Below, piece by piece: positions 1-44,271 of a stretch of DNA of 45,300 bases (its first letter is position 1; every line of letters begins with the position of its first letter). The stretch is taken from NCBI RefSeq assembly GCF_001194135.2, contig NC_069000.1:35375388-35420687 (forward strand), read 5' to 3'. The notes beneath the pieces are model-generated. The model had not been told where the DNA came from and made no database searches. It saw nothing but the letters and a program-made list of their open reading frames with translations. The translations under genes and the position numbers were made by a program. This stretch comes from Octopus bimaculoides (lineage: Eukaryota).

Positions 1-985
1 TTCTTTTAAACCTTTGTCAGATGGCTGGGTTGATGTATCATCTCACTATTTTTGTACTAAAGAGATGATTGAGTTGATTTCTTCAAGAATATATATTCTG
101 CATTTACTGTTATAATCTGCTCTTGAATCTAATGCCCCACCCACCATTCCTTCTGCACACACACAGACACACACTTCATAGCTAAAAATAAGACTTTGCA
201 TGCAAGATTTTTGCCCAAACCATGTATTTTGGCACTTAGGTAACCCAGGATTTCCTTACAATCAACTGAAACATGTGCCTTGCACAAGTGACTTCAATGC
301 CACCGACACAGGAGTTGATTGCTCTTCCTGTGTTGGGCTGCACCTCAATTCCTGGCTGTGTAACGATGCAAAATTCCATGGCTTCACAAGACACATGGAT
401 GTCAAAGAAATATAAAAGAAGGTTGTTGGATCCCACATCATTCTGTCTTCTTCTCTTAAATCTTTACATCAAGTCAAAATTCTTCAGTGATGCCCAAACA
501 GTCTGGTGAGACATTCTTTGAAAGAAGATGGCCGGACAATTCTACTTAGACTCCTCTATGCTTCCAACTTTGAGTTGATGCCTTCAAGAGGTTCCTAGCA
601 CAGACCTTTCAGTGTTTTGTTCTTATTATCATCTTCCACAAAAGGATAACAGAGGGTCAAGAATGGTAGCAAGCTGGACTAAGATGGCTTATGCTGTGTG
701 TTTTGAGTTCAAACTCTGCTATTCCTGGATTGATAAACTAAGAAGCAGTATGGCACCAAGGGCTGATTCCATCAACTGCACCCATCTCTTTAAAATATTT
801 CTGACCTTCCAGCAATATATGAAAAAATCCTTATTGTCCACTCCAGCCTCTCCCACCACCATTGTCTAATACTCTTATAACACCCTCTTCCCTACACCCT
901 GCTACTTTAACTTCTTTTCTTTACCATTCCAGTAAATTTCATTTTTTTGTTTGTGAATGACTTTTTTTCTTTGACACCTTTGCAG

Positions 986-1168
986 AGTCTAGACGTGAAG
1001 TCGATGGGGCGTATCTTCATTGGCCTTGTTAAATGTGGTGCCTGGGGCTGTTTTGATGAATTCAATCGACTGGAACCGCCAGTGCTGTCAGCTGTCTCCA
1101 TGCAAATCCAAGTCATCCAAGATGCTATCAAAAGCAAATCAAAACACATGGAATTACTCCGTAAAAAT
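986..1168 (+). CDS. DYNC2H1: Dynein-2 heavy chain exon 1 of window (AAA1 Walker B: [61 protein letters not shown])
   Basis: Acceptor tttgcag|, donor |gtaaga, phase 0/0. [10 protein letters not shown] is the dynein AAA1 Walker B motif; [17 protein letters not shown] is typical of dynein-2. Confidence 0.95.
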
Positions 1169-1202
1169 GTAAGAAGAATTTCATGCAGCCACATTAATGT
1201 GA

Positions 1203-1219
1203 TCATCATCACCATCATC

Positions 1220-1251
<32 letters not shown>

Positions 1252-1462
1252 CATCATCATCATTATTATCACCATCATCATCATCATCATTATTATTTTC
1301 ATCTTTATTATTTTCATAAATATCATTATCTTCATATCATTAACATCATCATCATTATCACAGTTATCATTTTCATTAACATCATTATCTTCACATCACT
1401 ATTAGTGTCATGACCATCAGCAACAGCAGCAGCAGCATTACCACCACCATCAACATTATCAA

Positions 1463-1493
<31 letters not shown>

Positions 1494-1500
1494 GTCGTCG
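1203..1500. repeat. (ATC)n / (ATT)n compound microsatellite
   Basis: Directly visible; explains the poly-I/poly-M ORFs. Confidence 0.95.
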
Positions 1501-1690
1501 TCAAATTTTGTGTTAGAAGCAGCTTGGTATTATAAATATTATCAACATCACATACTGAATGTATGTGTGTTATTAAACATTTGTAGCTGTGGTATTTTGT
1601 CTAAGGGATCCCTTTAAAGACATATAGTGTTAAAAAACACAGTATAATCCAAAGCTAGGTGAAACAAAATCACCTTGGAATTGAACTTGA

Positions 1691-1738
1691 ATGACAGATA
1701 TTGATATTTCACAGATTTTACTGTTTCATCAGTGTTAT
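1691..1738 (-). ncRNA. Putative minimal type I hammerhead ribozyme, copy 1
   Basis: Minus strand: AUAACA-CUGAUGA-A-ACAG UAAAAU CUGU-GAA-AUAU CA AUAU-C/UGUCAU. Both core boxes are intact, stems I-III can form, AUC cleavage triplet; one extra A before stem II. Confidence 0.65.
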
Positions 1739-2016
1739 CTACTTACCCCACTTCTGAGACAAATCCGCAGTAGCTAGCTAGAAATATATATACAAATATC
1801 ATAAAATCTTTTGCCGATGTGCAAAAGCACAGCACAAGTAGAACAAAATTCAAAGTTTGTGTTAGAAATATCTCAATAATGTAAGCATTATCGATATCAC
1901 ATATTTAATGTATGTGTGTTGTCAAATACTACAAAACTGCAGTTTTCTGTCTAAAGATATGTAGTGGTTAAAAACAAAAACACAGCATACTTCAAAGCTA
2001 GGTGAAATGTAAATGA

Positions 2017-2063
2017 GTGACAGATACTGACATTTTGTAGTTATTTCTGCTCATCAGTGTCAC
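2017..2063 (-). ncRNA. Putative type I hammerhead ribozyme, copy 2 (degenerate, GAAA changed to AAAA)
   Basis: Minus strand: GUGACA-CUGAUGA-GCAG AAAUAA CUAC-AAA-AUGU CA GUAU-C/UGUCAC; perfect 6-bp stem I. Confidence 0.55.
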
Positions 2064-2624
2064 ATACCTCTACACTTCTGAAGTAAACCATGACAATTAG
2101 CTGAAAGTATATATAAAAATAGCATAAAATCTATTTCCTGATGTGCAAAAGCACAGCACAAGTAGATCAAAATTCAAAGTTTGTGTTAGAAATATCTCGA
2201 TAATGTAAGCATTATCAATATTGCATATTTAATGTATGTGTGTTGTCAAATACTACAAAGCTGCAGTATTCTGTCTGAAGACATGTAGTGGTGAAAAGAA
2301 AACACAGTATACTTCAAAGCTAGGTAAAATGTAAATGAGAGTGTGTGTAAAGGCACATGGCTTAGTGGTTAGAGTATTTGGCTCATTGTCATATGGTTGT
2401 GAGTTCAATTCTTGGCAGTACATTGCATCCTTGAGTAAGACACTATATTTCACATTGCTCGGCTCCACTCAGCTGGCAAAAATGAGTAGTACCTATATTT
2501 CAAAGGACCAGCCTTGTCATGCTATGTGTCATACTGAATCTCCCAGAGAACTACATTAAGGGTATGTGTGTTTGTGGAGTGCTCATATATATATATATAT
2601 ATGAGACAGGTGTACGTACGCCGC

Positions 2625-2657
<33 letters not shown>

Positions 2658-3605
2658 TACAGAATGGGACAAGAACACAAAACATCCAGATAGACGATAC
2701 AAAGAAAACAAGGACAGGTCATTCAGAGTTTTCTTTCTTCAGTCGAGATCCAGATTATCTTTGCAATTTCAGCTGGTTATTCTCAATATTGCTCCAATCT
2801 GGACAGCCCCAAGGAAAAACTAAGCTAAGAGCATTAGATTCCTTGGGAGAAAGCAGCAAATAACATGACAGGCTTCTTTCAGTTTCTGTCTTCCAAATCC
2901 ACTCACAAGGCTTTGGTTAGCCTGAGGCTATAGTAGAAGACACTTGCCTAAAGTACCACACAATGGGACTGAACCTAGAACCATGTGGTTGGAAAGCAAG
3001 CTTCTTACTACACAGCCATGACTTAGATACATTATATGAGGTGTTCAGCTCCTGCCTCTGTGACATTAATGGCTTCTGATACTCTCTCCTCTCCTTCTCC
3101 CCCCTTCTCTCTCCCTCATTCTTTACTTTCTCTTTCCTCTCACTGGCATTGGCATAGACATATATATACACTGTATGTGTGTAGCATTCTCTCTCCTCTA
3201 TGGCTCACTGTGTGTCCATAAATTACCTTTACACTTTGAAAAATTCATAAGAAAAGGAAAAATAAGGATAACTCAGCTGAATTTATTGGAAAGCAGAAGC
3301 AAACAGATAAAGCTTTATTAGAAACATCAGAACATTTCCACATAGGCTCCAATGGTTGCGCACTAGACAGAGACACAATAAATTATGGAAGGTGTAAAGA
3401 TAATTTATGAACATCCTGTATGTGTTACATACATCCTCAAACGTCTTTCACACGAAAACAAGCACACATACACAAACATATACACAAATACACACACACA
3501 CACACACGTACACACACACATGCAAATTTAAGTATTGTTTAAATTCTGGAATATTCCATTCATTTGCTATTTGCCTGTTTTTTTTTTCTTCTCTTTGTCT
3601 TTCAG

Positions 3606-3829
3606 ATTGAAATTGACCATAACTCTGGTATCTTCATAACAATGAACCCTGCGGGTAAAGGTTATGGAGGCCGACAGAAACTACCAGACAATCTGAAGCA
3701 GCTATTTCGGCCAGTGGCCATGTCCAAGCCCGACAATGAGCAAATTGCTGAAGTCATCCTCTTTTCGGATGGTTTCAAAGAGGCCAAAATGATCGGACGA
3801 AAGCTGGTCACTATCTTTAATCTTTCCAA
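3606..3829 (+). CDS. DYNC2H1: Dynein-2 heavy chain exon 2 (AAA1 sensor I and Arg finger: [39 protein letters not shown]...LVTIFNLS)
   Basis: Acceptor tctttcag|, donor aa|gtaagt (phase 2). FITMNP and [14 protein letters not shown] are dynein motifs. Confidence 0.95.
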
Positions 3830-4094
3830 GTAAGTTGTTGTTGTTATGATTAGCTCAATGTGAGTCTTGATCCAGGAAACCTGTGTTCAGCAAAGGTATT
3901 TCCATTAATATTATTATCATTAATATTATTATCATTACCGGAGTTCAAATACCACCAAGATCTATCTGCCTTTCATCTTTTTGGGGTCAATAAAATATGT
4001 ACCAGTCAAACACTGGAGTCAATGTAATCAACTTACTCCCTCCTCAGAAATTGCTAGCCTTGTGCCTATAGTAGAAAGGATTATTATTATTATT

Positions 4095-4392: not shown

Positions 4393-4960
4393 TCAAAATT
4401 AAACCGGAATAACTGCGTTTCTTTCCAAGTAAAACTAACATCATCAGTCTTCGGTCTTTCACAAAGGGTAGCAGAAGGAAGGAAAGAAAGAAAAAAAAAC
4501 ACATAACGAAGGAAAAGAACTGGGGGCAAAAAAAATTTTCAGTCANNNNNNNNNNNNNNNNNNNNNNNNNNNNNNNNNNNNNNNNNNNNNNNNNNNNNNN
4601 NNNNNNNNNNNNNNCCTGCCATTTTATTAATTCCTCCATGATATGTCAACAGTTCACAAATATATCTATCCTTGTAGGTTTTGAGGACTGAAATATTTTT
4701 ATTGTGCAGGTGGCACATAAAAAACACCATTTGAGCGTTGCCATTGCCAGTACTGCCGGACTGGCCCCGTGCCAGTGGCACGTAAAAAGCACCCACTACA
4801 CTCTTGGAGTGGTTGGCGTTAGGAAGGGCATCCAGCTGTAGAAACTCTGCCAGATCAGATTGGAGTCTGGTGTAGCCATCTGGTTCACCAGTCCCCAGTC
4901 AAATCGTCCAACCCATGCTAGCATGGAAAGCGGACGTTAAATGATGATTATTATTATTAT

Positions 4961-5004: not shown

Positions 5005-5232
5005 AGGTGGTGAGCTGATAGAATTGTTAGCATACCTGGCAAAATGCTTAGCAGTATTTCGTCCGTCTTCACATTCTAAGTTCAAATTCCGCCAAGGTTG
5101 ACTTTGCCTTTCATCCTTTTGGGGTTGATAAATTAAGTACCAGTGAAACACTGGGGTCGATGTAATCAACTAGTCTCCTCCCCACAAAAATTGCTGCCCT
5201 TGTGCCTTTAGTAGAAAGGATTATTATTATTG
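5005..5232 (+). mobile_element. SINE family B1 (aaggyggcgagctggcagaa head, gcctttcatcctttyggggtcgataaa core, agaaagg(att)n tail)
   Basis: Further copies at about 3940-4094, 9833-10060, 12355-12545(-), 19015-19275, 22050-22250, 25745-25978, 26105-26295(-), 31425-31600, 31883-32150, 42070-42235. Confidence 0.8.
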
Positions 5233-5900
5233 TTATTCAGCTCCTCCTCCTTCTCCTCATCCATGTCAGTGACAATGGTGATAATGAGGATATAATTAGC
5301 TCTGGTCAGTCCTGATCCAAGAAACCTATTCATCAAAGGTGTTTCCAGTCATGGCGATCCCATCTATTTTACTTCAGATACAGTATAGTTAAGACAACAT
5401 TATTCAATGTCTCCCTCTTTCTTCTTCTTCTTCTTCTTCTTCTTCTTTTTCTTCTTCTCTGTCAGTGGCGATGGTGATGATGATGATGATCATTATGATC
5501 ATTATGATTATCTTCTTCTTCTACTTCTTTTTCTTCTTCTTCTTCTCCTCCCTTCTTTCTCTTCCTCTGTCAGTGATGATGATGATGATAACGACAACAA
5601 TGATGATTATTATTATGATTACCTCCAGGTCAATCCTTATCCGGGAAGAAACCTCTTCATCAAAGGTGCTTCCAGCCATGGCAATCCCATCCATTTTTCT
5701 TCATGCCCAACATAGCTAAGACAGCATTATTCAATGCCTCCTTCGTTGTTGTTGTTGTTGTTGTTGCTGTTTCTTAAGTCTAGGTCAGTCCTGAAGCGAG
5801 AAACCAATTCATCAAAGACATTCCACAACTGCCCACTCCACCTTTTATATTATTCAGAAGCAGTGCACTTAGGATCTCTTTTATCCAATGTGTCATTGCT
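5232..5900 (+). repeat. Three diverged tandem units interleaved with (TTC)n, (GAT)n and (TTG)n microsatellites
   Basis: Recurrent ggtcagtcctg...aacc...tcatcaaag...ccatc...taagac.acattattcaatg. Confidence 0.7.
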
Positions 5901-6027
5901 ACTACTACTACTACTGCTGCTGCTGTTTGGCTCTCAGCAAATGTGAATAAATGAGTCATTGGTAGAAGAAAACAATAAGTCTATAGTTCCTTAACATTGC
6001 TTGTGCTCCTGGTTCAGGTACTTCCTT

Positions 6028-6570: not shown

Positions 6571-7081
6571 GTTAATATTATCATTCTCTTCCATCATTTC
6601 TTCTTTTTATCCACCATTTGTTGTCTTTTCTCAAAAGCTGAATGAAGAAACAGGTGTACCTTAACATAGGTCTCTTCCTCTCACTTTCTTCAAAAAGAGC
6701 TACTGAATGCAACCAGGTCTATGGATTGCATGGAAATCAGTATCTGTAGGTCTGATGGTTACTCCACAATCACTCCATAAAGAGCATGGGGTCAGCTTCC
6801 CTGGTTTCTCTGGATGGAATGCTGGTGTGTTGCAGGATTACTCATTTTTATCGGCTGTGTGGACTGGGGCAACATGAAATAAGTGTCTTGTTCAAGAACA
6901 CACTGCATCACCTGGTTCAGGAATTGAAACCACAATCTTACAATCATGAGTCCAACACCCTAACCACTAAGCCATACACCTCCATAAATTATAAGAAGGA
7001 AGTGGATCTGATGAGTACACATCACTCCGTAAGGAGCATAGGGTCAGTTTCCTGGTTTCTCTGGTGTATATATTCCTCTCT

Positions 7082-7467: not shown

Positions 7468-8076
7468 ATATTCCTCTCTGGACAAGACACTGGTCCATTG
7501 CAGGTTTACTCGTTTTTATCCAGCTGAGTGGACTGGGGCAATGTGAAATGAAGTGTTTTGCTCAAGGACACAAAGCATTGCCCCATTCAGAAATCAAAGC
7601 TACAATTTTACTATCATGAGTGCAACACTCTAACCACTAAGCCATTCACCTCCATAAGTTATAGAAAGAAAGCAGATTGCGTGGAAATTAGTATCTATGG
7701 ATCTGATAGTCAGTTATAAAAATAGGGCCCAGAATGTCCATAATTTACTAGGATTTATACTTAGGTGCTCCTGCACTGATAGTGGCAATGCATGGTGCAA
7801 AGTGCTCGAGCAGGATTGGTTGTGATTGTTGCCCTGACTGCTGCAATGATTTTGCACTTCAAACTGTTTTTGTAGCTTGAGGTTTTTCCTACAGTAGCAT
7901 GCTCAGCCAAAGCCCAACGCTGTGTATTTAGGAAAGAGATTATAAGTGGAGCTGTCCCTTTTAACTGCTAGCTAAGATCCATGAAGAAATATTGTGTGAG
8001 TTACCTTCAGTCACAGACTCCTGGTCGTAAGTCATCTTGAAACTTCTCTGCTCAGGCCATTGCCATCACTGTCGAT

Positions 8077-10649: not shown

Positions 10650-10864
10650 TAACCATCGATGAAACAGTCGAATCAATGTTAGTGGTGCAGGCACTGAGAT
10701 TTAACACTCTGTCGAAGCTCACCTTCTCTGACAGCAGTGTGTTCGACAGTCTGGTGCAAGACATATTCCCCGGGGTTAGTTTCAAGGACATTCAGTTTGA
10801 GAATGTCGCTCAGGCATTCCGCGAGGTGTGTCAAGAACAGAACCTGACCGTTGATGAAAGCCAG
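10650..10864 (+). CDS. DYNC2H1: Dynein-2 heavy chain exon 4 (V-TIDETVESMLVVQALRFNTLSKLTFSDSSVFDSLVQDIFPG...LTVDESQ)
   Basis: Acceptor ttcttttag|, donor cag|gtaagt, phases 1/0. VVQALR.NT.SK and D.FPG motifs. Confidence 0.93.
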
Positions 10865-10962
10865 GTAAGTGAGACAAACTACCTTTACTCAATGTCCCAA
10901 ATAATGTCTGAGGTTTACAGCTTCAGTGTGAAGGATACGTGTATATTTTATTTGGTGTAGTA

Positions 10963-15565: not shown

Positions 15566-16589
15566 NNNNNNNNNNNNNNNNNNNNNNNNNNNNNNNNNNN
15601 NNNNNNNNNNNNNNNNNNNNNNNNNNNNNNNNNNNNNNNNNNNNNNNNNNNNNNNNNNNNNNNNNNNNNNNNNNNNNNNNNNNNNNNNNNNNNNNNNNNN
15701 NNNNNNNNNNNNNNNNNNNNNNNNNNNNNNNNNNNNNNNNNNNNNNNNNNNNNNNNNNNNNNNNNNNNNNNNNNNNNNNNNNNNNNNNNNNNNNNNNNNN
15801 NNNNNNNNNNNNNNNNNNNNNNNNNNNNNNNNNNNNNNNNNNNNNNNNNNNNNNNNNNNNNNNNNNNNNNNNNNNNNNNNNNNNNNNNNNNNNNNNNNNN
15901 NNNNNNNNNNNNNNNNNNNNNNNNNNNNNNNNNNNNNNNNNNNNNNNNNNNNNNNNNNNNNNNNNNNNNNNNNNNNNNNNNNNNNNNNNNNNNNNNNNNN
16001 NNNNNNNNNNNNNNNNNNNNNNNNNNNNNNNNNNNNNNNNNNNNNNNNNNNNNNNNNNNNNNNNNNNNNNNNNNNNNNNNNNNNNNNNNNNNNNNNNTAT
16101 ACACACACACACACACACAGACAGACACACACACACAGAGTTGGGCGTAAGTCCATTAATCCACTAATCATTAATTAATGAAGTTGACATTTTCATTAGT
16201 GATTCAACTTTTAAGTTAACTTTGAAAATCATTATCAGACTAATTAACTTTTGTTACATTTAGTTTCTGTTAACTCAAGTCCATTAACCCCAAAATTTCA
16301 TAAAAACTGGTAAACGTTTAAAAGTTTTTATTGTTTTCAGATTGTCTTAGTATATTTAATATTCTACGTGTCATATTTAGGTGGGGTTTTTTTCCTACAC
16401 TCATGCATAACACGGCCTCGCTCTGTTGGGACTACACGTGTGTTACTTTGACATCCTCATTGCATAAAATTTGTTTATGGGGAGAAAAATATTGAAAAAT
16501 ATCATTAGAAGTGTGAGTGAGAAAGAAACAAGGAGGCAGGTTTTGGGATGTGCTAGAAACAACAGCCAGATCTCCCATGAATCACACAT

Positions 16590-19529: not shown

Positions 19530-19917
19530 GTATGTTACAATGTTTTGTTATTGTTATTGTCATTATTGTATACGTAGCCAACCCTGCTCCCGCATGAGCA
19601 GTTAGTTCCACTACAGTCAACTCAAAGGTAACCTATAGCAGTGGCTCCCAAATGAATTTTTCACAGAATCTGTTATATGGTTTTCCCAGGGGGTGTGATA
19701 TGTTGAGGCGTTAACCCAGCGTTTTTATTCTAGAACTTANNNNNNNNNNATAGGTGCAGGCATGGTTGTTTGATAAGAAGTGTACCTCCCAACCACATGG
19801 TTCAGAGAGGGAGAGAGAAAGTGAGAGTGGGAAGGAGAGAGATTACATTGTGTGTGTGTGTGTGTGTATTTGTATATTGTTTATTGATATTGGCATCTTT
19901 TGTTCTTATATATTTAG

Positions 19918-20918: not shown

Positions 20919-21499
20919 NNNNNNNNNNNNNNNNNNNNNNNNNNNNNNNNNNNNNNNNNNNNNNNNNNNNNNNNNNNNNNNNNNNNNNNNNNNNNNNNNN
21001 NNNNNNNNNNNNNNNNNNNNNNNNNNNNNNNNNNNNNNNNNNNNNNNNNNNNNNNNNNNNNNNNNNNNNNNNNNNNNNNNNNNNNNNNNNNNNNNNNNNN
21101 NNNNNNNNNNNNNNNNNNNNNNNNNNNNNNNNNNNNNNNNNNNNNNNNNNNNNNNNNNNNNNNNNNNNNNNNNNNNNNNNNNNNNNNNNNNNNNNNNNNN
21201 NNNNNNNNNNNNNNNNNNNNNNNNNNNNNNNNNNNNNNNNNNNNNNNNNNNNNNNNNNNNNNNNNNNNNNNNNNNNNNNNNNNNAGGTACCAGATTTAAA
21301 AATAAATACTGAGGGCAATTTGCTTGACCTTCAAGACAGTTTCCCCGGCATGACCACAGTCCAGTGAATAAAAAAAAATGAAAGACAGACGATAAAAGCT
21401 ACTTAGATACGACATACATACATACATACATACATACATACACACATACATACATACGTACATACACACATACACACACACATACACACATCTGTATGT

Positions 21500-27645: not shown

Positions 27646-29971
27646 GTGAGAGACACTTAACCTTTGACAGGTGTTCTTCACCTTAATTACACTCATCATC
27701 ATCATCATCATTTAACATCCTCTTTCCTGTGCTTGCATGGTTCAGACGGAATTTGTTGAGGCTGATTTTCTTACAGCTTCACACCTCACCTGTTTCCAAG
27801 CAAGGTAATGTTTCTCCCCCTGATTTTCATAGAAGACTGGAAATGATCAACCTCACTTGTATGATGATGATGCTCATTTACAACCTTCACACGATGTCTA
27901 GATAAGGGTACACACAAATACATACACACATATATACACAACCACCCAGACATGCACTCATATATATATATATAATAGTATAGCTTTAACTATTACACCG
28001 GTTAAATATGTACTAATTTTATCTTCATTATTATTTTAAACTTAAACTTCGTTCAACTTGTATTTAAAACAATGATAATTTATGTAAGATGTTTTTTGTA
28101 TATAATATACATGTTATTATAATGGATGAAGGAATGATTATTGAATGGTTATTATTTTGATATTATGATATTTTTTAAATAATTTTTCTATCTTTATATA
28201 ATAAGTATTCATATTAATTCATTTGGTACTTATTGTTGGTTATCTAATTATTGTTCTACTTACGATCTGACGAGTAGCTATATTTTTGAATAGAACTTAT
28301 TTTCGATAATTTCAATTGATTNNNNNNNNNNNNNNNNNNNNNNNNNNNNNNNNNNNNNNNNNNNNNNNNNNNNNNNNNNNNNNNNNNNNNNNNNNNNNNN
28401 NNNNNNNNNNNNNNNNNNNNNNNNNNNNNNNNNNNNNNNNNNNNNNNNNNNNNNNNNNNNNNNNNNNNNNNNNNNNNNNNNNNNNNNNNNNNNNNNNNNN
28501 NNNNNNNNNNNNNNNNNNNNNNNNNNNNNNNNNNNNNNNNNNNNNNNNNNNNNNNNNNNNNNNNNNNNNNNNNNNNNNNNNNNNNNNNNNNNNNNNNNNN
28601 NNNNNNNNNNNNNNNNNNNNNNNNNNNNNNNNNNNNNNNNNNNNNNNNNNNNNNNNNNNNNNNNNNNNNNNNNNNNNNNNNNNNNNNNNNNNNNNNNNNN
28701 NNNNNNNNNNNNNNNNNNNNNNNNNNNNNNNNNNNNNNNNNNNNNNNNNNNNNNNNNNNNNNNNNNNNNNNNNNNNNNNNNNNNNNNNNNNNNNNNNNNN
28801 NNNNNNNNNNNNNNNNNNNNNNNNNNNNNNNNNNNNNNNNNNNNNNNNNNNNNNNNNNNNNNNNNNNNNNNNNNNNNNNNNNNNNNNNNNNNNNNNNNNN
28901 NNNNNNNNNNNNNNNNNNNNNNNNNNNNNNNNNNNNNNNNNNNNNNNNNNNNNNNNNNNNNNNNNNNNNNNNNNNNNNNNNNNNNNNNNNNNNNNNNNNN
29001 NNNNNNNNNNNNNNNNNNNNNNNNNNNNNNNNNNNNNNNNNNNNNNNNNNNNNNNNNNNNNNNNNNNNNNNNNNNNNNNNNNNNNNNNNNNNNNNNNNNN
29101 NNNNNNNNNNNNNNNNNNNNNNNNNNNNNNNNNNNNNNNNNNNNNNNAAGTAAATCTAAGACATTTCAATTCAGAAAGAATTTATTAAAATGATTTTAAA
29201 ATTATATAAAGAAAATATAGAATACTACCAGTTTCAATGATGAATCTCATCGTATCAAATATTTGTAAAAATTTATAAAAATTTGAAATAAAAACAGTTT
29301 ATCTTCTGTTCAGGGGTCAAAAACATGTCTGGAGTTTTTTCATTGAAGTCTTCCTTAAATATAGAGTTTGAGGTATTAGAGAGAAAGAGAGGGGGTGTAG
29401 TTATTTATTGTCTTAAAATAATTCTGTGTAGGTTCCTGTCAAGGGATGTGTATTCTACTTGCATTTATTGTTGTGTGATTGTTGGATATAGTCTTCTAAA
29501 TTTGTTTAAAACTGAATGCTTTCTTGATATCTGCCTGGATTTTTCAATCCCACATAAAAAGCATCCAGTTCACACTGTAATGGGGTTGGCCTTTGGAAAG
29601 ATATCCAGCTGTAGAAATCATGCCTAAACTGACTTTGCCTGTGCTTGTGCCATTTGAAAAGCAATCTGCAAATTGGTTGGTGTTAGGAAGGGAATCCGGC
29701 CGTAAAAACCCTTCCAAAACAGACACAGTAGCCTGGGGTAGTCTTTTACCTGGCTGGCTCCTGTCAACTGTCCTACCCATGTATGCATGGTAGGCAGACA
29801 TTTATAATTTCAAGAAATTCAGAATATTTGACAGCAAAAATATGCATAGAGACAATCACATCTTTATTATAGAATTCATTTTATAAAGCCAACAATTGTT
29901 TCTATTGTATTAACATATTTAGATGTAGAAAATACCGTTGAAATTAACATTGATATAACATACACACACAC

Positions 29972-30942: not shown

Positions 30943-31172
30943 GCGGTGCGTGGCTTAGTGGTTAGGGTGTCAGCATCATGATCGTAAGATTGTGGTTTCG
31001 ATTCCTGGACCGGGCGACGCGTTGTGTTCTTGAGCAAAACACTTCATTTCACGTTGCTCCAGTCCACTCAGCTGGCAAAAATGAGTAATGCTGTGATGGA
31101 CTGGCGTCCCTTCCAGCTGGAAAACATACACCACTGAAACCGGGAAACCGGGCCAGGCTTTGAAAGGGCGCA
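30943..31172 (+). mobile_element. SINE family A' with alternative tail (gatggactggcgtcc...aaagggcgca)
   Basis: Second copy at 31612-31860(+). Related copies at 6790-6983(-), 7030-7655(-, split), 12560-12732(-), 17902-18125(+), 24868-25130(+). Confidence 0.8.
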
Positions 31173-31611: not shown

Positions 31612-31860
31612 TGGAGGTGCGTGGCCTAGTGGTTAGGGTGTCAGCACCATGATTGTAAGATTGGGGTTTCGATTCCTGGACCGGGCAATGCATTGTGTTC
31701 TTGAGCAAAACACTTCATTTCACGTTGCTCCAGTCCACTCAGCTCGCAAAAATGAGTAACGCTGTGTGATGGACCGGCGTCCTGTCCAGCTGGGGAACAC
31801 ATACGCCATTGAAACCGGGAAACCAGGCCCATGAGCTTGGCTAGGCTTTAAAAGGGCGCA
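31612..31860 (+). mobile_element. SINE family A' with alternative tail
   Basis: ggaggtgcgtggcctagtggttagggtgtcagc head; closely similar to the 30943 copy. Confidence 0.8.
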
Positions 31861-33863: not shown

Positions 33864-34522
33864 CGCAGGAGTGGTTGTGTGGTAAGTAGCTTGCTTACCA
33901 ACCACATGGTTCCGGGTTCAGTCCCACTGCGTGGCACCTTGGGCAAGTGTCTTCTACTATAGCCCCGGGCCGACCAAAGCCTTGTGAGTGAATTTGGTAG
34001 ATGGAAACTGAAAGAAGCCCATCGTATNNNNNNNNNNNNNNNNNNNNNNNNNNNNNNNNNNNNNNNNNNNNNNNNNNNNNNNNNNNNNNNNNNNNNNNNN
34101 NNNNNNNNNNNNNNNNNNNNNNNNNNNNNNNNNNNNNNNNNNNNNNNNNNNNNNNNNNNNNNNNNNNNNNNNNNNNNNNNNNNNNNNNNNNNNNNNNNNN
34201 NNNNNNNNNNNNNNNNNNNNNNNNNNNNNNNNNNNNNNNNNNNNNNNNNNNNNNNNNNNNNNNNNNNNNNNNNNNNNNNNNNNNNNNNNNNNNNNNNNNN
34301 NNNNNNTGTGCGTGTGTGTGTTTGTCCCCCCAACATCGCTTGACAACCAATGCTGGTGTGTTTACGTCCCCGTAACTTAGCGGTTTGGCAAAAGAGACCG
34401 ATAGAATAAGTACTAGGCTTACAAAGAATAAGTCCTGGGGTCGATTTCCTCAACTAAAGGCGGTGCTCCAGCATGGCCTCAGTCAAATGACTGAAACAAG
34501 TAAAAGAGTAAAGTAAAAGAGT
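33864..34522 (+). mobile_element. SINE family C, full length; assembly gap in its internal microsatellite
   Basis: 5' half ends gaagcccatcgtat at the gap; 3' half resumes tgtgcgtgtgtgtgtttgtcccccc. Confidence 0.8.
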
Positions 34523-38964: not shown

Positions 38965-39279
38965 ATTTCGTCAGTTACGATGGCGAAGGTTCCAGTTGAT
39001 CCGATCAGTGGAACAGCCTGCTTGTGAAATTAACATGCAAGTGGCTGAGCACTCTACAGACATGGGTACCCTTAACATAGTTCTCAGGGAGATTCAGCTT
39101 GACACAGAGTGTGACAAAGTTGGCCCTTTGAATTACAGGTACTACTCATTTTTGCCAGCTGAGTGAACTGGAGCAAAATGAAAAAAATGTCTTGCTCAAG
39201 GAAACAACGTGCCACTGGGAATCAAACTCACGACTTTACAATTGTGAGCCGAATACCCTAACCACTAAGCCACATACCT
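38965..39279 (-). mobile_element. SINE family A', inserted in a fold-back arm
   Basis: Reverse complement of the A' consensus, from accactaagccacatacct to cgtcagttacg. Confidence 0.8.
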
Positions 39280-40774
39280 TGATGTGTTTAATATGTAAAT
39301 CAGTCTATCCAATAGTGTTACACTGCTAAGCTTAGAGGCTATTTAAGCAAGGTATCCATGGATAGTTAATGGGTTAGATGTGGTACTGAAGAAGGAGCAA
39401 TAACTCCAGAAATATGCATATACATCCATTACATTTTTTTCTATCTTCGATCACATTGTTTACATAGACATGGGTGGATGTAAGTATATATATGTATATG
39501 TGTATTCATCATCATCATCATCATCATTTAACATCTGTTTTCTATGCAGGCATGGGTTGGACGATTTGTCCAGAGCTGGGGAGCTGCACCAGACTCCGGT
39601 CTAATTTGGTTTGGTTTCTACAGCTAGATGCCCTTCCTAATGCCAACCACTTTACAGAGTGTGCTGGGTGCATTCTATGTGGCCCCAGCACCAGTGAGGT
39701 CTGCTTTGGCATAGTTTCTGCAGTTAGATGCCCTTCCTGATGCCAACCACTTTACAGAGTGTACTGTGTGCTTTTTATAAGGTACCATCATGAAGGCTTT
39801 TTACGTGGCACTGGCACTGGCACTGGGCTCTTGCGGGCCAACCCTCTTCACCAGGAGGACTGGCCTTAACACTTCTGCTGTGGAGTATGNNNNNNNNNNN
39901 NNNNNNNNNNNNNNNNNNNNNNNNNNNNNNNNNNNNNNNNNNNNNNNNNNNNNNNNNNNNNNNNNNNNNNNNNNNNNNNNNNNNNNNNNNNNNNNNNNNN
40001 NNNNNNNNNNNNNNNNNNNNNNNNNNNNNNNNNNNNNNNNNNNNNNNNNNNNNNNNNNNNNNNNNNNNNNNNNNNNNNNNNNNNNNNNNNNNNNNNNNNN
40101 NNNNNNNNNNNNNNNNNNNNNNNNNNNNNNNNNNNNNNNNNNNNNNNNNNNNNNNNNNNNNNNNNNNNNNNNNNNNNNNNNNNNNNNNNNNNNNNNNNNN
40201 NNNNNNNNNNNNNNNNNNNNNNNNNNNNNNNNNNNNNNNNNNNNNNNNNNNNNNNNNNNNNNNNNNNNNNNNNNNNNNNNNNNNNNNNNNNNNNNNNNNN
40301 NNNNNNNNNNNNNNNNNNNNNNNNNNNNNNNNNNNNNNNNNNNNNNNNNNNNNNNNNNNNNNNNNNNNNNNNNNNNNNNNNNNNNNNNNNNNNNNNNNNN
40401 NNNNNNNNNNNNNNNNNNNNNNNNNNNNNNNNNNNNNNNNNNNNNNNNNNNNNNNNNNNNNNNNNNNNNNNNNNNNNNNNNNNNNNNNNNNNNNNNNNNN
40501 NNNNNNNNNNNNNNNNNNNNNNNNNNNNNNNNNNNNNNNNNNNNNTATATATATATATATATATATGCTGGTACTTAAAGTCATACAGACACAAACATAT
40601 TGCTATTTTAGTTTTTCTGTTTTCTCTGTCATTTTGCTAATTTTCATTCCGTCCCTTTTGCTCTCAATTTCTCTTTCTCTGTCCTTCTCTCTGTCCAGAA
40701 GGAGTATTTTCCTTTGAGTATGTGACACAGAATTTCATACTCTGGCTCTCTCTCTCTCTCTCTCTCTCTCTTTT

Positions 40775-43960: not shown

Positions 43961-44271
43961 AGAGGCATATGGCTTAGTGGTTAGGGTATTCATAAGGTCG
44001 TGAGTTCAATTCCTGGTGACACATTGTACTCTTGAACAAGACACTTTATTTCACATTGCTCCAGTCCCCTCAGCTGGTAAAAATGAGTAGTACCTGTAAT
44101 TCAAAGGGCCAGCTTTGTCTCATTCTGTGTCATGCTGAATCTCCATGAGGTCTATGTTAAGGCTACATGTATCTGTGGAGTGTTCAGCCACATGCACATT
44201 AATTTCACAAGCTGGCTATTCAGTTGATCGGATCAACTGGAACCCTCATCATTATAACTGACGGAGTGCCA
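43961..44271 (+). mobile_element. SINE family A' (tRNA head, ccagtccactcagctgg core, A-type 3' tail)
   Basis: The same composition occurs at 2350-2585(+) and 38965-39279(-). Confidence 0.8.

What the first reader, a model, noticed from the sequence alone, without database searches (positions are those of the whole stretch)
1500..2343. Tandem ~325-bp repeat with one hammerhead ribozyme fold per unit (retrozyme-like array) in intron 1, antisense to the dynein gene
Seen: on the minus strand the same position in two units, 326 nt apart, gives a minimal type I hammerhead. Copy 1 (1691-1738) has CUGAUGA, stem II ACAG/CUGU, GAAA, near-palindromic stem III AUAU-CA-AUAU and an AUC site. Copy 2 (2017-2063) has a perfect stem I GUGACA/UGUCAC and stem II GCAG/CUAC. 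The first stem II pair is A-U in one copy and G-C in the other, a compensatory-type change. Unit similarity ends at about 2339-2343, within a few nt of where the third cleavage site would fall, as expected if a self-cleaved multimeric RNA was reverse-transcribed and inserted. Established: minimal type I hammerheads with palindromic stem III occur in Penelope-like elements and act as dimers, and metazoan retrozymes are non-coding tandem repeats of a few hundred bp with one hammerhead per unit that yield small circular RNAs. Inference: this is a cephalopod retrozyme or non-autonomous Penelope family. I cannot tell whether it is already described. Copy 2 (G12 to A) is probably dead, and copy 1 has one extra A.
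Basis: partly seen in the sequence, partly recalled or inferred. Interest (0 to 1): 0.85.

Follow-up and report, generated by a model that had tools for sequence, protein, structure and literature searches.

The report
Decayed hammerhead-bearing tandem repeat in intron
An intron of a dynein motor gene holds about 2.6 head-to-tail copies of a 326-base non-coding repeat, each with a hammerhead self-cleaving-RNA motif; it is most likely the worn-out remnant of an already known kind of mobile element (an animal "retrozyme"), and whether it belongs to a dispersed family could not be checked.

Summary
Window 1494-2343 is a 2.6-unit tandem array with a period of 324-326 bp and 31-32% GC. On the minus strand, two type I hammerhead-like motifs lie 326 nt apart.

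- **Copy 1 (1738-1691):** every fixed core nucleotide is intact.
- **Copy 2 (2063-2017):** it has G12->A and a C.A mismatch in stem II, so it is probably dead.
- **Chance:** a motif as good as copy 1 is expected about 3e-4 times per window.
- **Constraint:** the 12 substitutions between the copies spare the core and the helices. Random placement does this in 0.5% of trials.
- **Against:** no Rfam hammerhead model matches, even at E<=10 on 71 nt. The hammerhead fold is not favoured (+2.4 against an MFE of -7.5 kcal/mol). The units are unequally diverged, and the array is a single locus in the 45 kb window.

Dispersed relatives could not be tested, because this genome is absent from the searchable collections; a control confirmed that.

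My best reading, at about 0.6, is an inactive relic of a metazoan non-LTR retrozyme or Penelope-derived repeat. That makes it a new member of a known kind. "Intron 1" is correct only relative to the window: the host gene is a cytoplasmic dynein 2 heavy chain gene, and the intron lies between AAA1 exons.

The parts
1494..2343 (-). Whole tandem array: 2.6 head-to-tail units of about 326 nt, 31-32% GC, with no ORF longer than 36 aa inside it
2023..2343 (-). Unit A. Its 5' end lacks the first 3-5 nt after the predicted cleavage site, and it ends with hammerhead-like copy 2.
1697..2022 (-). Unit B, the full 326-nt monomer that cleavage after C2023 and C1697 would release. It ends with hammerhead-like copy 1.
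1494..1696 (-). Unit C. It is truncated after about 204 nt where it abuts the (GAC)3(GAT)n microsatellite, carries two insertions (17 and 13 nt), and is about 76% identical to A and B.
1691..1738 (-). Hammerhead-like copy 1. All fixed core nucleotides are present (CUGAUGA, GAA, A15.1, U16.1, C17). There is an extra A between A9 and 10.1. Helix I has 5 of 6 pairs, helix II is 4 bp (A10.1-U11.1), and the helix III segment is AUAUCAAUAU. Predicted cleavage is after C1697.
2017..2063 (-). Hammerhead-like copy 2. CUGAUGA is intact, helix I has a perfect 6 bp, and helix II has 3 of 4 pairs (C.A). G12 is replaced by A (AAAA for GAAA). The equivalent cleavage position is after C2023. It is probably inactive.
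1202..1493 (.). Flank: an (ATC)n microsatellite of about 290 bp that abuts the 3' (minus-strand) end of the array
2350..2585 (+). Flank: a tRNA-derived SINE of a family with at least 10 copies in the window. It lies 7-10 nt beyond the 5' (minus-strand) end of the array and is followed by (TA)n at 2585-2656. No array sequence resumes beyond it.
1169..3605 (+). Host intron of a cytoplasmic dynein 2 heavy chain-like gene, from the donor GTAAGA at 1169 to the acceptor ...tttcag ending at 3605. It lies between two exons that encode the AAA1 domain. The hammerhead motifs are antisense to the gene.

Best explanation
The array is a degenerate, now inactive relic of a hammerhead-bearing non-autonomous retroelement of the metazoan 'non-LTR retrozyme' / Penelope-derived kind.

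Inferred mechanism of the ancestor: a multimeric minus-strand transcript folded one type I hammerhead per unit, perhaps pairing two neighbouring motifs through the near-palindromic helix III segment. It cut itself after the C of AUC and released monomers of about 326 nt. These could be ligated into circles and copied back into DNA by a Penelope-like reverse transcriptase/endonuclease supplied in trans.

Shown here: the repeat architecture, the motif, its rarity by chance, and the pattern of differences between the two copies, which spares structure and core.

Inferred only: past self-cleavage, circular RNA, retrotransposition, and the Penelope partner.

At this locus today, copy 2 has lost the catalytic G12. 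Copy 1 has very weak helices I and III. The motif is antisense to the host gene, so no function for the dynein transcript is expected.
For: - **Architecture.** The unit is 324-326 bp, there are 2.6 head-to-tail copies, GC is 31-32%, and nothing is coding. This matches the published format in PMC7229834.
- **Core.** Copy 1 has every fixed core nucleotide, and its helices are the canonical metazoan sizes: helix I 6 bp and helix II 4 bp (sizes from PMC4209133).
- **Rarity.** The chance rate is about 3e-4 per 45 kb window.
- **Pairing.** Each copy forms 12 of 13 standard pairs, against 11-46% of cells paired when the partners are slid by 1-3 columns. Two pairs change on both sides (A-U to G-C), and one changes from A-U to G.U.
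- **Constraint.** Of the 12 substitutions inside the 48-nt motif, only one hits a fixed core nucleotide. Random placement does as well on both counts in 0.5% of 200,000 trials.
- **Array end.** The 5' end of the array falls 3-5 nt from the predicted cleavage site, which has about 4% prior probability for a random boundary.
- **Flanks.** The array abuts microsatellites, and Penelope-like elements insert preferentially into microsatellites (PMC8557442).
- **Precedent, if the source is a cephalopod.** Type I hammerheads (235 Rfam Hammerhead_1 loci in the giant squid genome, PMC6962438) and active Penelope-like elements (Octopus vulgaris, PMC13282606) are both on record.
Against: - No Rfam hammerhead family reaches even E<=10 on the 71-nt stretch around copy 1.
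- The hammerhead secondary structure of copy 1 scores +2.4 kcal/mol against an MFE of -7.5 that pairs part of the core. The fold z-scores are about -0.8.
- The helix III self-duplex and helix I of copy 1 are each worth about 0 kcal/mol.
- Pair 10.1-11.1 is A-U in copy 1, not the highly conserved G-C.
- No loop 1 / loop 2 tertiary contacts can be shown, and published retrozymes carry canonical hammerheads that have them.
- The whole unit is not unusually structured: z = -1.42 on either strand.
- The hammerhead end of the unit is the least conserved part (71% against 92%), and unit C is about 76% identical to both A and B. The array was therefore not simply inserted as identical units that then decayed.
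- There are only two motif copies, so covariation cannot be assessed properly.
- The array is a single locus in the window, and no relative could be retrieved anywhere.
- The descriptor and the constraint test were designed after seeing the sequence.
Confidence: 0.6

Rival explanations
1. It is a chance motif. An ordinary intronic minisatellite arose by local tandem duplication or unequal crossing-over of AT-rich sequence that happens to contain CUGAUGA...GAAA with short complementary flanks. No ribozyme ancestry is involved.
For: - All Rfam hammerhead models miss it.
- The hammerhead fold is not the preferred fold, and no fold is significantly stable.
- The helices are short and AU-rich.
- The units have unequal divergence, as expected from stepwise local duplication.
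- It is a single locus in the window.
- At about 3e-4 per 45 kb, a genome of a few Gb would hold tens of chance hits of this quality.
- CUGAUGA resembles the (GAT)n microsatellites that abound here.
Against: - The expectation of about 3e-4 per window has to coincide with three other things: a tandem repeat of retrozyme size, a motif phase that matches the array boundary, and a second copy whose 12 substitutions avoid the core and preserve 12 of 13 pairs (p about 0.005).
- If copy 1 had drifted into the motif by chance, the differences from copy 2 should be enriched at motif positions. They are depleted there.
Confidence: 0.25
2. It is a still-active retrozyme locus. The array is transcribed from the minus strand, copy 1 cleaves (alone or by pairing with copy 2), and linear or circular RNAs of about 326 nt are produced today.
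For: - The core of copy 1 is complete and the AUC site is cleavable.
- Natural hammerheads tolerate an extra nucleotide after A9 (PMC4209133, citing De la Pena and Flores 2001).
- Minimal hammerheads are known to need dimers or host factors.
Against: - Releasing a monomer needs two cuts, and copy 2 has G12->A, the catalytic general base (established hammerhead biochemistry; my own knowledge).
- Helices I and III of copy 1 are worth about 0 kcal/mol.
- The locus fails the published criterion of two consecutive complete hammerheads.
- The units are 8-25% diverged, so the locus is old.
Confidence: 0.07
3. It is a fragment of a larger element rather than a free-standing retrozyme. Examples are tandemised pseudo-LTRs of a Penelope-like element whose coding part was lost, or an internal tandem-repeat region of another transposon.
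For: - Penelope-like elements carry their hammerheads in pseudo-LTRs and insert as partial tandems, often into microsatellites.
- Retrozyme consensus sequences are homologous to Penelope pseudo-LTRs (bioRxiv 10.64898/2026.07.22.740005).
Against: - No reverse transcriptase or GIY-YIG endonuclease domain was found among the ORFs scanned in the window, and the array has no ORF longer than 36 aa.
- The helix sizes (I 6 bp, II 4 bp) are those of canonical type I hammerheads. They are not the long helix II and short helix I of Penelope minimal hammerheads.
- The repeat period is 326 bp, not several kb.
Confidence: 0.08

Closest known systems
Metazoan non-LTR retrozymes (Cervera and de la Pena 2020, PMC7229834; Li et al. 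2026, bioRxiv 10.64898/2026.07.22.740005), which include the newt/axolotl satellite hammerhead repeats of 330-350 bp and the mussel and coral families
   Same: It has head-to-tail non-coding repeats of about 300 bp, low GC, and one type I hammerhead motif per unit in the same phase. Helix I is 6 bp and helix II is 4 bp. Helix III is weak and near-palindromic, which suggests dimer action.
   Different: No loop 1 / loop 2 tertiary-contact nucleotides can be recognised, and Rfam Hammerhead_1 does not match. Pair 10.1-11.1 is A-U. There are only 2.6 units, one motif has lost G12, and no dispersed family or circular RNA has been shown.
Minimal hammerheads of Penelope-like elements (Cervera and de la Pena 2014, PMC4209133)
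   Same: It has type I topology and an unpaired nucleotide between A9 and 10.1 (copy 1). The 15.x-16.x segment is short and self-complementary. Low intrinsic stability and high sequence variability with compensatory changes between copies are also shared.
   Different: Penelope minimal hammerheads have a long helix II (6-8 bp), a short helix I (2-5 bp) and a conserved G10.1-C11.1 pair, and they sit in pseudo-LTRs flanking an RT-EN ORF. Here helix II is 4 bp, helix I is 6 bp, copy 1 has A-U at 10.1-11.1, and no RT/EN lies nearby.
Plant LTR retrozymes (Cervera et al. 2016, PMC4918200)
   Same: The concept is the same: a non-autonomous element whose RNA is cut by hammerheads.
   Different: Plant retrozymes have type III hammerheads in LTRs, units of 600-1000 nt and GC above 55%. 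None of this applies here.

Membership tests
Hammerhead ribozyme, type I | Fixed core nucleotides C3 U4 G5 A6 N7 G8 A9, G12 A13 A14, A15.1-U16.1, H17 | tested here: met
   Copy 1 has all of them. Copy 2 fails at G12 (A), so the feature is met in one of two copies.
Hammerhead ribozyme, type I | Three helices around the core, with helix I open-ended | tested here: met
   Each copy forms 12 of 13 standard pairs, against 11-46% of cells paired for slid controls. The helices are short and AU-rich.
Hammerhead ribozyme, type I | Match to a curated covariance model (Rfam Hammerhead_1, _3, _II, HH9, HH10) | tested here: not met
   There is no hit at gathering score on the window, none at E<=10 on 1.1 kb, and none at E<=10 on 71 nt.
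Hammerhead ribozyme, type I | The hammerhead fold is energetically accessible | tested here: not met
   The hammerhead structure of copy 1 scores +2.4 against an MFE of -7.5 kcal/mol, and that of copy 2 scores -0.7 against -9.2. Helix III as a dimer is about 0 kcal/mol. Nearest-neighbour energies ignore the tertiary structure of the core.
Hammerhead ribozyme, type I | Covariation in the helices across family members | tested here: inconclusive
   Only two sequences are available. Two pairs change on both sides, one changes on one side, and two cells are broken. The constraint simulation gives p about 0.005.
Hammerhead ribozyme, type I | Site-specific self-cleavage | not testable with these tools
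   This needs in vitro transcription of monomer and dimer constructs.
Metazoan non-LTR retrozyme | Head-to-tail tandem repeats of about 170-400 bp, dimers to multimers, with GC below 45% | tested here: met
   The period is 324-326 bp, there are 2.6 units, and GC is 31-32%. The definition comes from PMC7229834.
Metazoan non-LTR retrozyme | Canonical type I hammerhead with loop 1 / loop 2 tertiary interactions in each unit | tested here: inconclusive
   The helix sizes are canonical, but no conserved loop nucleotides can be recognised and Rfam Hammerhead_1 is silent. A possible distal extension of helix I exists only in copy 2 and is not significant.
Metazoan non-LTR retrozyme | [quoted passage not shown] 2026), with the array called by TRF | tested here: not met
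   Copy 2 lacks G12. TRF with their parameters does not call the array.
Metazoan non-LTR retrozyme | A multi-copy dispersed family in the genome | not testable with these tools
   The window holds a single locus. Both metagenome scans, the prokaryote-genome scan and the six-frame protein search were negative. A control shows that this genome is not in those collections.
Metazoan non-LTR retrozyme | Expression as small circular RNAs | not testable with these tools
   No transcriptome data are available.
Penelope-like element minimal hammerhead | [quoted passage not shown] | tested here: met
   Copy 1 has an extra A at 1725. Copy 2 lacks it through a 1-nt deletion. The trait is described.
Penelope-like element minimal hammerhead | A highly conserved G10.1-C11.1 pair | tested here: not met
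   Copy 1 has A-U. Copy 2 has G-C but is the copy without G12.
Penelope-like element minimal hammerhead | Palindromic 15.2-16.2 / loop 3 that allows a dimeric helix III | tested here: inconclusive
   AUAUCAAUAU is self-complementary at 8 of 10 positions, with a central C.A/A.C mismatch. Its duplex energy is about 0 kcal/mol.
Penelope-like element minimal hammerhead | Location in pseudo-LTRs flanking an RT plus GIY-YIG ORF; long helix II and short helix I | tested here: not met
   No RT/EN domain was found among the scanned ORFs, and there is no ORF longer than 36 aa in the array. Helix II is 4 bp and helix I is 6 bp.

The most novel reading that the evidence does not exclude
The locus is a member of a live, so far undescribed retrozyme family in this (possibly cephalopod) genome. 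Its AU-rich hammerhead would have canonical helix sizes, an A10.1-U11.1 pair and an extra nucleotide after A9. It would be invisible to the Rfam models, work as a dimer or with host factors, and yield circular RNAs of about 326 nt. The structure-preserving divergence between adjacent units would then reflect RNA-level replication and selection.
Probability: 0.12. Interest if true: 0.5.

Novelty: new member of a known kind. Interest (0 to 1): 0.3.

Why it matters
If the family exists, it would add one more animal lineage to the known range of hammerhead retrozymes. It would also be an example of a hammerhead variant that the curated covariance models miss, which is useful for tuning ribozyme searches and for studying the link between retrozymes and Penelope-like elements. 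It would not change the current picture. Tandem repeats of about 300 bp with type I hammerheads are already described from corals to salamanders, including molluscs, and hammerhead loci have been counted in a squid genome. This particular locus is old, partly broken and antisense to its host gene, so no effect on the dynein gene is expected.

Tried and rejected
- **Rfam scans** at gathering score on the whole window, and at E<=10 on 1.1 kb and on 71 nt, gave no hammerhead hit. They returned only noise from snoRNA families and a weak tRNA hit in the neighbouring SINE.
- **TRF** with three parameter sets never called the array.
- **Search for relatives.** Two exact-pattern scans of metagenome contigs built from blocks invariant in all three units, one scan of prokaryotic genome contigs, and a six-frame translation of the array against 5.8 billion proteins all returned nothing.
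- **Control for those negatives.** ORFs of the flanking SINE, which has at least 10 copies in this window alone, also find nothing. The dynein exon finds nothing above 86% identity. This genome is therefore not in those collections, and the negatives say nothing about dispersal.
- **Orthologous-intron comparison** through the dynein exon had to be abandoned for the same reason.
- **Energy of the dimeric hammerhead.** This topology is a pseudoknot for the evaluator, so I used duplex energies of the individual helices instead.
- **Whole-unit folding** for a rod-like circle gave z = -1.42 on both strands, which is not informative.
Packed ORFs were used instead and showed only dynein domains.
- **Continuation beyond the SINE.** I rejected the idea that the array continues past the SINE, because BLAST finds no similarity there.
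- **The second repeat with 327-bp spacing** at 5319-5765 is unrelated to the array.
Full report
**What is in the sequence.**

Window 1494-2343 is a head-to-tail direct repeat. A BLAST of the region against the whole window aligns it to itself at an offset of about 326 nt (76% over 525 columns, E=2e-104) and finds no other copy in the 45.3 kb. The repeat finder reports spacings of 322-327 nt.

A three-way alignment defines these units on the minus strand:
- Unit A runs from 2343 to 2023.
- Unit B runs from 2022 to 1697 and is 326 nt long.
- Unit C runs from 1696 to 1494. It stops after about 204 nt against a (GAC)3(GAT)n microsatellite and carries two insertions.

The array has 31-32% GC and no ORF longer than 36 aa inside it. 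Tandem Repeats Finder does not report it under any of three parameter sets, including those of a published retrozyme pipeline.

**The motif.**

Copy 1 (1738-1691) reads AUAACA-CUGAUGA-A-ACAG-UAAAAU-CUGU-GAA-AUAUCAAUAU-C-UGUCAU.
- Every fixed core nucleotide is present.
- Helix I forms 5 of 6 pairs and helix II has 4 bp.
- Within one molecule, helix III can form 3 bp with a UCAA loop.

Copy 2 (2063-2017) reads GUGACA-CUGAUGA-GCAG-AAAUAA-CUAC-AAA-AUGUCAGUAU-C-UGUCAC.
- Helix I is a perfect 6 bp.
- G12 is an A. G12 is the catalytic general base (established hammerhead biochemistry), so this copy is almost certainly dead.

The two predicted cleavage positions, after C1697 and after C2023, are 326 nt apart.

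**Is it more than chance?**

I wrote a descriptor that copy 1 satisfies:
- CUGANGA, followed by 0-1 extra nucleotide;
- a 4-bp helix II with a 3-8 nt loop;
- GAAA;
- a helix III of at least 3 bp closed by A15.1-U16.1;
- any base but G at position 17;
- at least 5 of 6 pairs in helix I.

In the real window it hits only copy 1. A version that also allows one helix II mismatch and any base at G12 adds only copy 2. In 6000 simulated first-order Markov windows of the same composition, the copy-1 descriptor hit twice, or about 3e-4 per window on both strands. The loose version hit 0.015 times per window.

The descriptor was written after seeing the motif, so the true figure is somewhat higher. A genome of a few Gb would still hold tens of such hits by chance. 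The motif alone is therefore suggestive, not decisive.

**Evidence from comparing the two copies.**

The homologous position in the second unit is fixed by the repeat, so copy 2 is an independent test.
- Units A and B are about 92% identical over the first 240 nt or so.
- They are only 57-73% identical over the last 90 nt or so, which hold the motif (29 of 41 columns in the motif segment).
- Despite this, each copy forms 12 of 13 standard pairs, against 11-46% of cells paired when the partners are slid by 1-3 columns.
- Two pairs differ on both sides (A-U to G-C: the outermost pair of helix I and the first pair of helix II). One differs from A-U to G.U.
- Only one of the 12 fixed core positions differs.

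I placed 12 substitutions at random on copy 1, using the observed share of transitions:

| Outcome kept | Share of 200,000 trials |
|---|---|
| At least 12 pairs | 5.3% |
| At most 1 core change | 12% |
| Both | 0.5% |

If copy 1 had drifted into the motif by accident, the differences should pile up at motif positions. They avoid them.

This is the strongest argument that the sequence descends from a hammerhead that was once under selection at the RNA level. It agrees with the "high variability with compensatory changes" described for Penelope-type hammerheads (PMC4209133). The limits are that there are only two sequences and that I chose the statistic after the fact.

**Evidence against a working ribozyme.**
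- No Rfam hammerhead family matches. This holds at gathering score, at E<=10 on 1.1 kb, and at E<=10 on the 71 nt around copy 1, so all hammerhead models score below roughly 12 bits.
- The hammerhead secondary structure of copy 1 evaluates to +2.4 kcal/mol, while the minimum-free-energy fold (-7.5) pairs part of the core with the helix III segment. For copy 2 the values are -0.7 and -9.2.
- The fold z-scores are about -0.8.
- The helix III segment paired with itself as a dimer, and helix I of copy 1, are each worth about 0 kcal/mol.
- The whole unit is not unusually structured on either strand (z = -1.42).
- Pair 10.1-11.1 is A-U in copy 1, where G-C is highly conserved.

**Context.**

The host gene lies on the plus strand. 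It encodes a cytoplasmic dynein 2 heavy chain.
- Pfam AAA_6 matches exons at about 983-1168, 3606-3830 and 10661-10906.
- AAA_5, DYNC2H1_AAA_dom (PF21264) and AAA_7 match exons further on.
- The intron runs from the donor GTAAGA at 1169 to the acceptor ending at 3605.

It is therefore an internal intron between AAA1 exons, and "intron 1" is correct only within the window. The motifs are antisense to the gene, so the dynein pre-mRNA does not contain them.

Reading along the minus strand:
- The 5' end of the array loses similarity at 2339-2341, 3-5 nt short of where the third cleavage site would fall (2345|2344). A random boundary would land this close about 4% of the time.
- Seven to ten nucleotides further on begins a tRNA-derived SINE (2350-2585, plus strand). 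Its family has at least 10 copies in the window (weak tRNA hit). It is followed by (TA)n.
- No array sequence resumes beyond the SINE.
- The 3' end of the array is in mid-unit and abuts a 290-bp (ATC)n microsatellite.

Penelope-like elements are reported to insert preferentially into microsatellites (PMC8557442). That fits, but it is weak evidence.

**History of the array.**

This is only partly compatible with the data.
- The 5' boundary fits the proposal.
- The 3' end does not lie at a cleavage site.
- The units are not equally diverged. Over the same columns, A and B are about 92% identical, while C is about 76% identical to each.

So either later conversion homogenised the bodies of A and B, or the array grew stepwise, or the units were already different in the template.

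**Relatives elsewhere.**

- Two exact-pattern scans of metagenome contigs, built from blocks invariant in all three units, found nothing.
- One scan of prokaryotic genome contigs found nothing.
- A six-frame translation of the array searched against 5.8 billion proteins found nothing.

These negatives are not informative. As a control, ORFs of the neighbouring SINE, which must be extremely abundant in this genome, also found no candidate. The dynein exon found nothing above 86% identity. This organism's genome is therefore not in the searchable collections. I also could not verify that the source is a cephalopod.

No reverse transcriptase or GIY-YIG endonuclease domain turned up among the ORFs of at least 62 aa that I scanned from 11-45 kb. 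A non-autonomous element does not need a neighbouring partner, so this carries little weight.

**Comparison with what is known.**

Metazoan non-LTR retrozymes are defined as follows (PMC7229834):
- short tandem repeats with monomers of about 300 bp, from dimers to large multimers;
- GC below 45%;
- a canonical type I hammerhead in each unit;
- expression as small circular RNAs.

A 2026 preprint derives them from the pseudo-LTRs of Penelope-like elements. It calls an array active only if two consecutive units carry complete hammerheads (bioRxiv 10.64898/2026.07.22.740005).

The present array meets the criteria of architecture, composition and motif phase. It fails the "two complete hammerheads" criterion and the covariance-model criterion. 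It cannot be tested for dispersal or for circular RNA.

Its helix sizes (I 6 bp, II 4 bp) are those of canonical metazoan type I hammerheads. Penelope minimal hammerheads have a long helix II and a short helix I. However, it shares their extra nucleotide after A9 and their weak, near-palindromic helix III.

If the source is a cephalopod, two records are relevant. The giant squid genome has 235 Rfam Hammerhead_1 loci (PMC6962438), and Octopus vulgaris has recently active Penelope-like elements (PMC13282606). Neither component would then be new to the lineage.

**Verdict.**

The most likely explanation (about 0.6) is a decayed, inactive relic of a hammerhead-bearing non-autonomous repeat of the retrozyme / Penelope-derived kind.

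| Alternative | Probability |
|---|---|
| A chance motif in a locally duplicated minisatellite | about 0.25 |
| A still-active locus | about 0.07 |
| A fragment of a larger Penelope-type element | about 0.08 |

Even if fully correct, it is a new member of a known kind at a single eroded locus, so my interest score is modest (0.3). The decisive step is a homology search of the 326-nt monomer in the source genome, followed by covariation analysis and a cleavage assay of the family consensus.

Noticed in passing
window 2350-2585 (+), with further copies at e.g. 39046-39280, 43963-44186, 30951-31087, 31615-31758, 6839-6975, 7481-7645: There is a tRNA-derived SINE family with at least 10 full or partial copies in the 45 kb window. 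Rfam gives a weak tRNA hit at 2358-2416. The copy next to the array is followed by a (TA)n tail at 2585-2656.
   Followed up: partly
window 1202-1493: A microsatellite of about 290 bp, (ATC)n with variants, starts only about 35 nt downstream of the exon's splice donor (GTAAGA at 1169). It directly abuts the truncated end of the array.
   Followed up: partly
window 5319-5438 and 5646-5765: A second direct repeat, with a spacing of 327 bp and 81% identity, sits in a microsatellite-rich stretch (5241-5915). It is not similar to the array by BLAST and holds no hammerhead-like motif, so the similar period looks coincidental.
   Followed up: partly
window 983-1168, 3606-3830, 10661-10906 and further exons up to about 45 kb (+): The host gene is a cytoplasmic dynein 2 heavy chain 1-like gene. 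Its exons match Pfam AAA_6, AAA_5, DYNC2H1_AAA_dom (PF21264) and AAA_7, and all lie on the plus strand. The best database relatives of the first exon are only 78-86% identical, so no close relative of this genome is in the protein collection.
   Followed up: yes
window 4546-4614, 15566-16097, 19740-19749, 20919-21284, 28322-29147, 34028-34306, 39890-40545: There are seven runs of N (2738 bases in all). These are gaps of a draft assembly, so repeats near them may be collapsed or missing.
   Followed up: no
many places between 11 and 45 kb, both strands: An abundant interspersed repeat gives translated frames that read like 'GLVKPDGNTRLQSDLAEFLQLDALPNANHSE...'. It appears in many copies and has no Pfam match, so it is probably another non-coding SINE-like family.
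   Followed up: no
window 3967-4050 and 5105-5188; also 4042-4094 and 5182-5234: This is an 84-nt direct repeat at 82% identity, with an adjoining 53-nt block at 89%, 1138 bp apart. Each copy ends in (ATT)n, which looks like the 3' end of another short interspersed element.
   Followed up: no
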